Shown in pieces: positions 13,506-16,421 of a stretch of DNA of 64,000 nucleotides. Source of the DNA: Octopus bimaculoides (lineage: Eukaryota). Positions within the stretch are counted from its first letter, which is position 1. Every line of letters starts with the position of its first letter. The translations under genes were made by a program, and so were the position numbers. Below the pieces are notes generated by a model. It did not search any database and was not told where the DNA came from. It saw only the letters and a program-made list of their open reading frames with translations. The stretch is taken from positions 29,122,984 through 29,186,983 of the forward strand of contig NC_069003.1 of the NCBI RefSeq assembly GCF_001194135.2, read 5' to 3'.

Positions 13506-15014
13506 GTCCCACTTTTCAATATCATACCTCGTATAAATGTATTTTCCGAATACTATTTGCTATTTATTCTTACGCAATCATATAATGTCGTATACACATT
13601 TACATCTATCGACACACTACTTAACGTCTTCAGTTTCTACCCTCCCCCCTCTCACGCACACTCACAGTCATTCATCCTCAGTTTGTTTGTTTTTTTTTTG
13701 TTGTTTTTCTTTTGTTCCTATTTACAAAGAGTTGTTTGGATTACGCTCTAAACACTTACAGAATGAAGTTAACCACGAAATAAAAACAAAATCCACTGAA
13801 ACTATTAAACGACGAAAACCACAAAGCTACTAATGTTCGTACTGATGTATCAAACACTATTATGGTTTTATTGAAAAAAAAAATGTATTTCGAAGCCAAT
13901 ATTTCGAAGTAGATTGCTTCAAGCTATTTGTATAATATATATGAGGCTTAATATAATTCAGAAACAGGTTGCTTGCAACACAACCGAGTGTTATTGGAAA
14001 CAATACAAGAATCAAATCCTGTTTAATGAAATTTCTTAAAGAAATATAAAGTCTTTTGTACATATATTTGATACGCTGCTGTTTGTCGTTGTTGTTGCTG
14101 CTGTTGTTGTTGATGGTTTTGCTTCTGCTACTGTTGTTCTTGTTGATAATGATGATTATGATGATGGTGTTGCTCTTGTTGTTTAGTTTCATCAGAACGC
14201 TGAATAGGAAAATTTTTGATCAAAGGCTCTCAAGCTATAACTATGCCGTCATTTCTATCTCCAGACGAAATATATCAAAGACTGCATAAAACAAAGCTTT
14301 ATTCCTCTTTTATATATTTTCGTTGGCAAGATACTTGCTTTTTGTGCATGTACGCGCGTGTGCGTGGCTGTGTATGGTCGTGTGCTGGAATTGTTCATAA
14401 TTACATCTATATATTTGTAAGGATTTCTATATAACTTGCTTTCATTCTAATCCTACCCTATCCGTACCTACATATAGTCACGTACGTGCACGTTCGCGGA
14501 TGCGTAAATATGTGTATTGCGTATTGTGTATTGATATGTGGTTTGTATTGAAGTTGTACATATTTACATGTATTTATTTGTATGGATTTCCATGTTGTCA
14601 GCTGTGATTCTAACTATAACCTTTATATATCTGCCTATACCATGTAGACATGCTCACACTTACGGACACACCCAAACGTCTACATTGCGTGTGCAGTTAC
14701 AATGAAGTATATATAGGTGGATAGAGCAGCACCAAATGTTCCAGCTTCCTCAAAGGGACACCCGGAGCGGACCGTCTCATTCGTTGCCCGCAAGCTGCGT
14801 TACTGTGTAGATTGCAGCTCCTTCCGTTAGCCGCCTCCCTAACATCCGGATCCTTACGTTCATACACTCTTATACAGCAGACTCAAAATGGCGATCTCTA
14901 TAAGAAAGCCAGATGAGTCAGACCGCTCCAAGTTGCCTCTACACACCAGCTATGCTATTGTATTGAAGTGCAGGACTTTTCCTCCGCTAGCTAAGCCATT
15001 ATATATGTATATAT

Positions 15015-15350
15015 TGTTGTGTCGGCTCCTCCAGGCGACGAGGTGGCAGATTGTGAGTTTGTGGTCTCCAGGTAGGAGACATAACAGTGACGACGAGGTT
15101 TCTAATAGCACCAAAAATAGCACCAAAAATTGATTAAAAGTGAATCAAGGGACCGGCATAGTGAACGTATAGAAGAGATTTTCAAATGAATAAGTGATTA
15201 TGGATTTAAAGTAAGGGAGGATAAATAGGGTTTTTTTTTGAAGAGAAAAAAACAAAAAAAAAACTCAAAAGGGAGAGGTGTTGTGTCGACGCCCCCAGGC
15301 GACGAGGTGGCAGATTGTGAGTTCGCGGTCCCACACCTGGAGACATAACA
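15015..15350 (+). mobile_element. Non-autonomous miniature LTR retrotransposon (TRIM-like), 336 bp
   Basis: Two 72-bp direct repeats (15015-15086 and 15279-15350), both TGTTGTGTC...GACATAACA. Primer-binding-site-like TGACGACGAGG at 15088-15098, polypurine tract AAAAGGGAGAGG at 15267-15278, and TATAT on both flanks. Confidence 0.85.
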
Positions 15351-16421
15351 TATATATATTCAAATGTGAGTGTGTGTGTGGATATATATACATAAACAGA
15401 TACATACATATCATGCATGTATGGTAGTAGGTATATGCATAAACGTTTATTAACAGGCTTCTCTCATAGTATTAGTGCATTACTGTTTATTCCAATTGCT
15501 TACCAAATTATGTTTACAGCATTCGTTTTTTCCAACAATTATTTTTAAAATATTGATCGAATGGATTCTTTAAAATCTAAAAGAATACATTATCAAATAT
15601 ATTGATTTGTTTCCATTTAGGAAGAACAGAAAAGCAGCTTTGTAAGCATAATTTCTGTTTTTTTCACAATCAATTAAAGCACTGGAAAGTTTAAAGTTTT
15701 AATGAAAGTTCCAGAAAACCAGGGTATTTACTGGTTTAAATTTTCATTCTTCTGGTAGTTAAATAGTGAAGGTTTTAATTTTTAAATATAATTAATGAAT
15801 ATATTTCCTATATTGAGAAGTAATTATTGATATTCTATCGATTTATTATTCCACTTAGCGAAATACTTTAAAATTAAACGTTTTCAACGTTTTCATAAAT
15901 TACATAAGAGAGTTAAGATTGGGTATAATGTAAATTTAGTAGTTTAAGCGGACACTATTGTATGCTCCAAATTTGTAGGTCGATCTAGATATCAGTCTAT
16001 ATATACATACATTCATACACATACACATGAACGCACACACGCAAAGTACATATGCATACGCATAAGCAAATGTGTATCAATAATACATTAAAAATGAAGT
16101 TCAATCATGCTTGCTTGCAATGTTACACAGCCATACTGGCGCTTAATGGGAAAATACATTTAAAGTAAGCTCCCCTGAAATGAGAATACGAAGGGAATAA
16201 AGCAAGTTTCGAGTAAATCGGACCAGTGGCTATTGTGATATTCGGTGTTTGACATGGATGTGTTTGACGGGAAAAATACAAGAATGTCTAAGACCAGTCA
16301 CGTGACTATCCTCTATTAATCAAATCCTTTTCAACTTCTATTCTTCCTGTATCTCTAACCCTGTGGAATAAAATGCCTTTGATTTATATATATACATACA
16401 AACATAACTACATATATGTAT

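What the first reader, a model, noticed from the sequence alone, without database searches (positions are those of the whole stretch)
15010..15355. Complete 336-bp TRIM-like LTR retroelement with 72-bp LTRs
Seen: two 72-bp direct repeats with TG...CA ends and 9-bp inverted termini (TGTTGTGTC/GACATAACA), 60/72 identical when aligned without gaps. They enclose a 192-bp non-coding interior. One base after LTR1 is TGACGACGAGG, and immediately before LTR2 is AAAAGGGAGAGG. TATAT flanks both sides. Known: TGGCGACGAGG is complementary to the 3' end of tRNA-Ser(GCU) (...CCUCGUCG-CCA) and occurs as a primer-binding site in Gypsy-type elements; this copy matches 10/11. LTR, primer site, polypurine tract, LTR and TSD without coding capacity define a TRIM. 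TRIMs are reported mainly in plants and a few animals, and I know of no cephalopod description. Inference: a non-autonomous family with unusually short LTRs, mobilised by a Gypsy partner.
Basis: partly seen in the sequence, partly recalled or inferred. Interest (0 to 1): 0.8.

Follow-up and report, generated by a model that had tools for sequence, protein, structure and literature searches.

The report
Dead miniature LTR retroelement in octopus
A 336-base, non-coding, long-dead miniature LTR retrotransposon sits at this spot in an octopus genome; it is a small relative of a low-copy group of elements with unusually short (about 72-85 base) terminal repeats, which is a modest addition to what is known rather than a new kind of element.

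Summary
Two 72-nt direct repeats (15015-15086, 15279-15350) are 60/72 identical. They start TG and end CA. A tRNA-Ser(GCU)-type primer site lies 1 nt after the first repeat, a 12-nt purine tract abuts the second, and TATAT flanks both sides. There is no coding capacity.

Reads from the same species show that two modules recur elsewhere in the genome at roughly 10-60 copies each. One is the purine tract plus LTR start. The other is the LTR tip plus primer site plus about 30 nt of leader. In those copies the primer site is the perfect TGGCGACGAGG and the purine tract is AAAAGGGGGAGG. One read joint plus loose-end consensi indicate that the paralogous LTRs are also only about 75-85 nt long.

So this is a true LTR-retroelement derivative from a short-LTR group. 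No second copy with this exact LTR body and architecture was found at 80% identity or more. The LTR middle and interior are shared instead with a different repeat that lacks the primer site.

The copy is old. It is present at the orthologous site in an octopus lineage about 4-5% diverged, and both the primer site and the purine tract are mutated. The partner's superfamily (Gypsy or other) was not testable. The TSD is only weakly informative.

Verdict: a new member of a known kind (TRIM-like), of modest interest.

The parts
15010..15014 (.). Left copy of the putative 5-bp target-site duplication (TATAT), within a TA-rich tract
   Evidence: TATAT is 1.2% of window 5-mers. It is retained in the X14 ortholog, where no change is listed at 15010-15014.
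15015..15086 (+). 5' LTR (72 nt, TG...CA). It is the more decayed of the two: CpG to TpG changes and a probable micro-inversion at about 15066-15078.
   Evidence: The X14 ortholog of this LTR is 66/72 identical to the window's 3' LTR (built from the variants).
15087..15098 (+). 1-nt spacer (G) plus primer-binding site TGaCGACGAGG. This is 10/11 complementary to the tRNA-Ser(GCU) 3' end. Paralogs carry the perfect TGGCGACGAGG.
15099..15128 (+). Leader. The first ~20 nt (to 15112/15118) are shared with paralogous, expressed elements. It contains a 12-nt tandem duplication, AATAGCACCAAA x2, at 15104-15127.
15129..15226 (+). Interior module. It is shared at about 90-95% identity with a separate multi-copy repeat ('A-type'). 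In that repeat it directly follows a copy of LTR positions 30-63 plus TGACAT, with no PBS.
15227..15266 (+). Low-complexity T-run/A-run part of the interior
   Evidence: Paralogs diverge here (loose ends at 15226).
15267..15278 (+). Polypurine tract AAAAGGGaGAGG. Paralogs have AAAAGGGGGAGG.
   Evidence: 15274 A>G in most paralogous reads.
15279..15350 (+). 3' LTR (72 nt, TG...CA, 6 CpG, 60% GC). The first 24-32 nt are shared with paralogous LTRs. Positions 30-63 are shared with the A-type repeat.
15351..15355 (.). Right copy of the putative 5-bp target-site duplication (TATAT)
36388..36474 (-). Single-copy, 67%-identical fragment related to 15098-15186 (leader plus start of interior, collinear across the 15128/15129 junction). 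It has no LTR or PBS.
   Evidence: (score 26.5 against shuffles 11.4 +/- 1.3).

Best explanation
This is an ancient, inactive, non-autonomous LTR retroelement of the TRIM type. It is 336 bp long, with 72-nt LTRs and a 192-bp non-coding interior.

It belongs to, or derives from, a low-copy group of octopus LTR elements with these shared features:
- LTRs that are all very short, about 72-85 nt.
- The same LTR termini (TGTTGTGTCG... and ...ACATAACA).
- The same 11-nt primer site for tRNA-Ser(GCU).
- The same polypurine tract.
- Different middle parts of the LTR.

Inferred life cycle, from established LTR-retrotransposon biology:
1. An RNA running from one LTR to the other was packaged by proteins supplied in trans by a coding relative.
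2. The 3' end of tRNA-Ser(GCU) annealed to the primer site and primed minus-strand DNA.
3. The purine tract primed the plus strand, and both LTRs were regenerated from the one RNA. This is why both carry the same miniature structure.
4. Integrase acting on the TG...CA inverted tips inserted the DNA into a TA-rich tract, duplicating 5 bp (TATAT).

Shown: the anatomy; the sharing of termini, PBS and PPT with paralogs; the short length of paralogous LTRs; the age and decay of this copy.

Inferred: mobilisation in trans; the identity of the partner; the TSD being a real duplication.
For: Anatomy. The features would coincide by chance at roughly 1e-9 or less if they are independent.

PBS and tRNA-Ser-GCT: (PMC10359600).

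Paralogous reads match 15076-15118 only (LTR tip, PBS and leader). Nearly all have G at 15090, and they then continue into two conserved, different leaders, one of which is also seen in RNA.

Paralogous reads match 15253-15302/15310 (PPT plus LTR start) and then diverge into related LTR bodies.

Two reads join 15302 through 40 nt to 15076. This gives a 75-nt paralogous LTR directly followed by the PBS (section 5c). The 'before 15076/15084' consensi in related species agree with that 40-nt middle.

Module copy numbers, from unitig depth over unique depth, are about 13-65x.

Both LTRs share the same miniature structure. The structure therefore existed when the DNA was made by reverse transcription, and is not the result of later deletions.

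Orthologous contigs in a lineage about 4-5% diverged carry LTR1 plus PBS, and LTR2 plus the right flank. That ortholog's LTR1 is 66/72 identical to the window's LTR2, and all six differences are transitions.

Host is an octopod: the best named relative of a LINE fragment in the window is an Octopus bimaculoides protein.
Against: No other copy with this LTR body or this overall architecture was seen at 80% identity or more. No raw read from elsewhere crosses 15066-15076, and depth over 15341-15356 is 0-4.6 reads per run.

The LTR middle (positions 30-63) and the interior (15129-15226) are contiguous in a different repeat that has no PBS and a different upstream sequence. This copy may therefore be a chimera or a one-off.

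The 75-nt paralogous LTR rests on one joint seen in 2 reads, plus 30-nt consensi.

The TSD lies in TA-rich sequence.

The LTR has no recognisable TATA box or AATAAA signal.

No coding partner was recovered.

No empty orthologous site was recovered, because unitigs of the more distant species break at the flanking microsatellite.
Confidence: 0.7

Rival explanations
1. A solitary product rather than a family. A single aberrant reverse-transcription event (internal deletion or template switching) on the RNA of a larger, possibly coding, short-LTR element produced this one 336-bp copy, and it never amplified.
For: Depth over the LTR1 body and over both LTR-body/LTR-tip junctions is at or near the single-copy level. 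Only the termini, PBS, PPT and leader are shared with paralogs. The only other fragment collinear across the leader/interior junction is a single-copy, 67%-identical piece.
Against: The read tool cannot see copies less than 80% identical. An old burst whose members are each about 8-10% from their ancestor would be borderline at that threshold. The A-type repeat carries this element's LTR middle, part of its LTR tip (GACAT) and its interior. This suggests at least one more copy of this subtype once existed.
Confidence: 0.3
2. A recombinant. The LTR middle (positions 30-63) and the interior 15129-15226 were captured from an unrelated repeat or transcript (the A-type sequence) by template switching in a particle. 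The short-LTR family supplied only the termini, PBS, leader and PPT.
For: In A-type copies the two segments are contiguous, joined by TGACAT. They are flanked by conserved sequence unrelated to the LTR: CAATATTTCAGCAAGTAATGGATACTATGC upstream and GTGAATTTTTCTTGAC... downstream. They occur at about 6-25 copies and are also present in related species.
Against: The A-type junction retains GACAT, which matches this element's LTR tip. That fits better with A-type being a deletion derivative (loss of AACA, PBS and leader, 46 nt) of an element like this one. The direction of descent cannot be decided from 30-nt consensi.
Confidence: 0.25
3. A Helenus-type TRIM: the LTR carries a tRNA-derived RNA polymerase III promoter.
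For: LTR positions 24-34, GACGAGGTGGC, equal the first 11 nt of tRNA-Ser-GCT. By eye, box-A-like (TGGCAGATTGTG) and box-B-like (AGTTCGCGGTCC) strings follow.
Against: ARAGORN finds no tRNA and there is no Rfam match. The local alignment of the LTR to tRNA-Ser-GCT scores 13.8 against shuffles of 10.5 +/- 2.1, and 39 of 500 shuffles reach that score. Seven of the 11 matching bases are forced if the LTR simply holds a PBS-like copy. The two 'boxes' would be only about 3 nt apart.
Confidence: 0.05
4. Not a retroelement at all: a local 264-bp duplication with chance PBS-like and PPT-like strings.
For: It is a single copy in the window, and the TSD lies in low-complexity sequence.
Against: The repeat boundaries fall exactly at TG and CA, next to the PPT and PBS. 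The same PPT plus LTR start, and the same LTR tip plus perfect PBS, recur in many other loci and in RNA.
Confidence: 0.02

Closest known systems
TRIMs (terminal-repeat retrotransposons in miniature). First described in plants; in animals reported from Hymenoptera, taeniid cestodes and bivalves (PMC6934838; review of distribution in PMC10886601).
   Same: Under 1 kb. Two terminal direct repeats. The internal domain starts with a tRNA-complementary PBS and ends with a PPT. No coding capacity. Only the termini, PBS and PPT are shared with other LTR elements.
   Different: The LTRs are 72 nt, against the usual 100-250 bp (PMC6934838). No multi-copy family with this exact structure was demonstrated. 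The host is a cephalopod. The bivalve biv-TRIMs lack a canonical PBS, whereas this element has one.
SMARTs (small LTR retrotransposons of plants; 292 bp; cited in PMC10886601 as the shortest non-autonomous LTR group)
   Same: Similar total size (336 against 292 bp) and the same minimal LTR-PBS-PPT-LTR plan.
   Different: SMARTs are plant elements with a presumed Copia partner (FRetro64). There is no sequence relationship, and the SMART family is multi-copy.
Helenus / TRIMp3 (Kojima 2024, PMC10886601): TRIMs with a tRNA-like sequence in the LTR. Found in bivalves among other animals; some use a tRNA-Ser primer; animal families give 4-bp TSDs.
   Same: A miniature LTR element in a mollusc with a tRNA-Ser-type PBS, and an 11-nt string in the LTR identical to the tRNA-Ser 5' end.
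   Different: The tRNA-like LTR was tested and not supported. The TSD candidate here is 5 bp, and the 4-mers do not match.
Mag-lineage Gypsy elements. The Mag lineage makes up over a third of mollusc Gypsy elements (PMC6238403). From my own memory, not verified here, Bombyx mag has unusually short LTRs of about 77 bp.
   Same: Very short LTRs in a metazoan LTR retrotransposon. This makes the lineage a plausible kind of coding partner.
   Different: No coding relative was recovered, so the superfamily and clade are untested. The resemblance is a lead only.

Membership tests
LTR retroelement (any superfamily) | Two direct terminal repeats that begin TG and end CA, with short inverted tips | tested here: met
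   72-nt repeats, TG...CA, tips 8/9 complementary.
LTR retroelement (any superfamily) | PBS complementary to a tRNA 3' end immediately downstream of the 5' LTR | tested here: met
   TGaCGACGAGG lies 1 nt after LTR1 and is 10/11 complementary to the tRNA-Ser-GCT 3' end. Paralogs are 11/11. The octopus tRNA-Ser gene itself was not examined.
LTR retroelement (any superfamily) | Polypurine tract immediately upstream of the 3' LTR | tested here: met
   AAAAGGGAGAGG at 15267-15278. Paralogs have AAAAGGGGGAGG.
LTR retroelement (any superfamily) | 4-6-bp target-site duplication | tested here: inconclusive
   TATAT is present on both sides. The genome-wide frequency of this 5-mer is 1.2%, but the site is inside TA-rich sequence and no empty site was recovered.
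TRIM | Total length under 1000 bp and no coding capacity | tested here: met
   336 bp. No ORF confined to the 192-bp interior exceeds 36 aa, and all the short ORFs look spurious.
TRIM | Terminal repeats of about 100-250 bp | tested here: not met
   72 nt, which is shorter than the range usually given (PMC6934838).
TRIM | A dispersed multi-copy family of the same element, each copy with its own TSD | tested here: not met
   At 80% identity or more, no read or unitig from elsewhere spans this LTR body to its tips. Only modules are shared. More diverged copies could not be searched for.
TRIM | An autonomous partner sharing the LTR ends, PBS and PPT | tested here: inconclusive
   Paralogs sharing exactly these parts exist and are transcribed. 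Whether any of them encodes gag-pol could not be determined.
Helenus (TRIMp3) | A tRNA-derived sequence with Pol III boxes in the LTR | tested here: not met
   ARAGORN finds none, Rfam finds none, and the alignment to tRNA-Ser-GCT is not above shuffles.
Ty3/Gypsy-mobilised element | A partner whose RT and integrase classify as Gypsy | not testable with these tools
   No eukaryotic genome collection was searchable. The window holds no LTR-type pol ORF.

The most novel reading that the evidence does not exclude
Octopods may carry a still-transcribed lineage of LTR retroelements whose complete LTRs are only about 72-85 nt. That would be among the shortest functional LTRs known. The terminal ~25 nt, the last ~10 nt, the tRNA-Ser(GCU) PBS and the PPT are conserved, while the LTR middle is freely swapped between subfamilies. 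This would define a near-minimal set of cis-requirements for LTR retrotransposition, and the 336-bp copy here would be one of its miniature non-autonomous offshoots, the first TRIM-type element described in a cephalopod.
Probability: 0.3. Interest if true: 0.5.

Novelty: new member of a known kind. Interest (0 to 1): 0.3.

Why it matters
If confirmed genome-wide, it would add cephalopods to the animal groups with TRIM-type elements. It would also document an LTR lineage with exceptionally short LTRs. That matters in two ways. First, it bears on repeat annotation: LTR finders usually require LTRs of at least 100 bp and would miss these. Second, it bears on how little LTR sequence is needed for reverse transcription and integration. 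As a single decayed copy, it has no evident effect on the host locus.

Tried and rejected
**Tandem repeat.** The recurrent read joint 15341 > TGACAT > 15129 ('goes back 213') first looked like a 219-bp tandem unit. I rejected that reading. The joint is what a collinear paralog (LTR middle, then interior) produces when its LTR-like piece aligns to the better-preserved LTR2 instead of the decayed LTR1.

**tRNA-derived LTR (Helenus-like).** Not supported.

**Known RNA families.** None in the element. The mir-466 and mir-297 'hits' at 15350-15423 are TG/TA microsatellite sequence.

**Other copies in the window.** None were found, apart from a 67%-identical 89-nt fragment at 36388-36474. That fragment proved single-copy and has no LTR or PBS.

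**Public collections.** Scans of the viral and metagenome contig collections with the PBS-leader and PPT-LTR patterns found nothing. These collections are not expected to hold octopus DNA.

**Long-read runs.** I looked for long reads to measure the distance between paralogous LTRs. None are served.

**Empty orthologous site.** The right flank is conserved in the more distant species, but their unitigs break at the microsatellite. The left flank falls below 80% identity.

**Coding partner in the window.** Only a LINE-type RT tail (4163-4490) and a possible Penelope-like GIY-YIG fragment were found.

**Literature.** The reference for the Bombyx mag short LTRs could not be found in the held library, so that comparison rests on memory.
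Full report
**1. Observation**

The sequence is as described.
- Two 72-nt direct repeats lie at 15015-15086 and 15279-15350. They are 60/72 identical without gaps, or 63/73 with one gap (blastn E=3.6e-16).
- Similarity begins exactly at TG and ends exactly at CA. The terminal 9-mers are 8/9 reverse-complementary.
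- One base after the first repeat is TGACGACGAGG.
- AAAAGGGAGAGG directly abuts the second repeat.
- TATAT flanks both sides.
- All three window matches to TGGCGACGAGG with one mismatch or fewer lie in this element: the primer site, plus a related AGGCGACGAGG inside each repeat. The chance expectation is 0.13.
- A 12-purine run with at least 5 G precedes 0.26% of positions. TATAT is 1.2% of 5-mers.
- The element sits in a TA-rich tract, and the window holds 46 (TA)n tracts of at least 5 units, so the TSD is weak evidence by itself.
- The 192-bp interior is 33% GC and the LTRs are 54-60% GC. There is no meaningful ORF, no tRNA and no Rfam family.
- It is the only copy in the window.

**2. Host**

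The window is a draft scaffold with N gaps. A LINE-type RT tail at 4163-4490 has an Octopus bimaculoides protein as its best named relative, at 71% identity. The public runs holding the locus are coded as organism A, with related organisms B and C.

**3. What the rest of the genome shows**

I laid raw DNA reads of the same species on the region. There were three runs, each sampled to about 1.9 Gb, and the flanks had depth 0-2. I also laid Logan unitigs on it. Every read from elsewhere fits only part of the element. Three modules emerge.

- **Module C, 15076/15081-15112/15118.** This is the last 6-11 nt of the LTR (..ACATAACA), the spacer G, the primer site and about 20 nt of leader.
  - Nearly all such reads have G at 15090, giving the perfect TGGCGACGAGG: 24/24, 10/11 and 12/12 DNA reads, and 10/10 RNA reads.
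  - They then continue into conserved but different leaders: GGAAGAGTTACTGAAAGCAGTAGTGAAACA (also transcribed) or TTTGGATGATCTCTACTCAACCGCTACACA.
- **Module B, about 15253-15302/15310.** This is the purine tract plus the first 24-32 nt of the LTR.
  - Most reads have G at 15274, giving AAAAGGGGGAGG.
  - The LTR then continues differently, for example ..GGCGAAGAAGTAGGATCTCCCAAGACATATAAATAGAGGTAGA.
- **Module A.** This is LTR positions 30-63, then TGACAT, then interior 15129-15226, all contiguous.
  - It is preceded by the conserved CAATATTTCAGCAAGTAATGGATACTATGC and followed by GTGAATTTTTCTTGAC....
  - It has no primer site.

Summed unitig depth relative to unique depth puts modules A and B at about 13-65 copies. 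Module C ranges from about 1.5x to 25x between runs.

Depth over the LTR1 body is at most about 1.7 times the unique level (single-copy in X1 and X11). No raw read from elsewhere crosses 15066-15076, and depth over 15341-15356 is 0-4.6 reads per run. So no second copy with this exact LTR body was seen at 80% identity or more.

**4. Modules B and C are the two ends of the same short LTR**

- In one search (section 5c), two reads join 15302 through 40 nt (AGAAGTAGAGATTATCCGAAGGTGCTAGACAGTAGTGCTT) to 15076. That gives a paralogous LTR of 24+40+11 = 75 nt, followed directly by the primer site.
- The 40 nt begin like the module-B continuations (AGAAGTAG..).
- They end like the 'before 15076/15084' consensi seen in related species (ATCCGAAAGGTGCAACAAAGCAGTAGGGTT and ..ATCCGAATGTGCGATATG).

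The genome therefore holds a group of LTR elements whose LTRs are all about 72-85 nt. They share termini, primer site and purine tract but have variable LTR middles. This is the pattern expected between a non-autonomous element and its relatives. The evidence for the LTR length is thin: one joint plus 30-nt consensi.

**5. Primer site**

The human tRNA-Ser-GCT-1-1 sequence printed in PMC10359600 ends CCTCGTCGCCA, the exact complement of TGGCGACGAGG. The octopus tRNA was not examined.

The LTR-internal GACGAGGTGGC equals the first 11 nt of that tRNA. This raised the idea of a Helenus-type, tRNA-derived LTR (PMC10886601). The alignment is not above shuffles, with 39 of 500 shuffles reaching its score, and ARAGORN is silent. 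I reject that idea.

**6. Age and decay**

- In run X14, the right flank differs by 21 substitutions over 515 nt. There, a single-copy 1392-nt unitig covers 14959-15118 (left flank, LTR1 and primer site), and an 854-nt unitig covers 15269-15783 (purine tract, LTR2 and right flank). The insertion therefore predates that split.
- I rebuilt the X14 ortholog of LTR1 from the listed variants. It is 66/72 identical to the window's LTR2, and all six differences are transitions. It keeps CG where the window's LTR1 has TG.
- The cluster of six adjacent mismatches in the window's LTR1 is largely explained by a micro-inversion of about 13 nt between the hairpin arms GTCTCC/GGAGAC. Undoing it raises identity to 64/72. 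This is an inference.
- The window copy also carries G>A changes in both the primer site and the purine tract.
- No RNA read matches this locus itself.

The copy is dead.

**7. Interpretation**

Both LTRs carry the same miniature structure, so that structure existed when the DNA was synthesised from one RNA. This is a product of reverse transcription, not a full-size element whittled down afterwards. It is non-coding, so it was mobilised in trans.

Two things remain open.
- Whether it ever formed its own family. The A-type repeat retains GACAT from the LTR tip, and so looks like a 46-nt deletion derivative of a sister copy that was later amplified inside another repeat. The opposite direction, capture of A-type sequence by template switching, cannot be excluded.
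- What the coding partner is. Mollusc Gypsy elements are dominated by the Mag lineage, and the CsRN1 clade is common in cephalopods (PMC6238403). From memory, Bombyx mag has LTRs of about 77 bp. These are leads, not tests.

**8. Comparison and novelty**

TRIMs are defined as non-coding elements under 1 kb, with terminal repeats of 100-250 bp, a PBS and a PPT (PMC6934838). They are already reported from Hymenoptera, cestodes and bivalves. Helenus elements are reported from six animal phyla, including Mollusca (PMC10886601). SMARTs, at 292 bp, are cited as the shortest group.

I found no paper describing TRIM-type elements in cephalopods. Repbase and Dfam could not be queried.

The element meets the structural criteria except LTR length, and it fails the 'multi-copy family' criterion as far as could be tested. 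It is best called a new member of a known kind, of modest interest.

**9. Limits**

- The read tool has an 80% identity floor and prints only 30-nt consensi.
- Unitigs break at repeats.
- No eukaryotic genome collection, long reads or repeat database were available.

Noticed in passing
window 36150-36353: The end of an extremely abundant repeat. Depth is about 8,000-9,500 per ~1.9-Gb DNA sample, which implies of the order of 10^4 copies. It is also abundant in RNA. There is a sharp boundary near 36353, and other copies have A/AAG-rich tails. It looks like the known high-copy octopus SINE.
   Followed up: partly
paralogs of window 15081-15102 (reads only; section 5c): Some paralogous copies carry the LTR tip plus PBS twice, 55-61 nt apart..ATAACAGTGGCGACGAGGTTTCT, then GCAGCTCACACAACCACTGTGTAGTATTGCGAT, then ATAACAGTGGCGACGAGG... 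These copies are transcribed. The cause is unexplained; it may be an aberrant strand-transfer product.
   Followed up: no
window 15064-15080 against 15328-15344: The window's LTR1 appears to carry a ~13-nt micro-inversion between the short inverted arms GTCTCC/GGAGAC, relative to LTR2 and to the ortholog in a related species.
   Followed up: partly
window 14508-14615: A short segment with raised DNA depth (about 5-15) and RNA reads in X24. 29 RNA reads run on at 14595 into ATCTTGCTGTCACTCTAATCCTATACTACA with 96% agreement. It is part of some transcribed repeat.
   Followed up: no
window 14641-14845 and 14928-14968: These stretches of the element's left flank have essentially no unitig depth at 80% identity in any of the four related-species runs. 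The right flank (15420-15800), by contrast, is conserved at about 93-96%. In X14 the left flank is present but much more diverged. The asymmetry is unexplained.
   Followed up: partly
window 4163-4490: An ORF encoding the C-terminal part of a non-LTR (LINE) reverse-transcriptase protein with a CxxC...H...C zinc-knuckle-like motif, running into an N gap. Its nearest named relative is an Octopus bimaculoides protein.
   Followed up: partly
window 60641-60934: An ORF with a ..VYIGQ..RYRNH.. motif reminiscent of the GIY-YIG endonuclease of Penelope-like elements. Judged by eye only.
   Followed up: no
window, several places (about 4490-4890, 16530-16930, 25000-25230, 33260-33850, 44300-44600, 49420-50150, 54950-55480): Runs of N totalling 4,760 bases. 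The window is a gapped draft scaffold, and many long 'ORFs' are artefacts of gaps and microsatellites.
   Followed up: yes
window 15350-15423: Sub-threshold Rfam matches to mir-466 and mir-297. These are TG/TA microsatellite sequence, which is hugely over-represented in reads, and not miRNA genes.
   Followed up: yes
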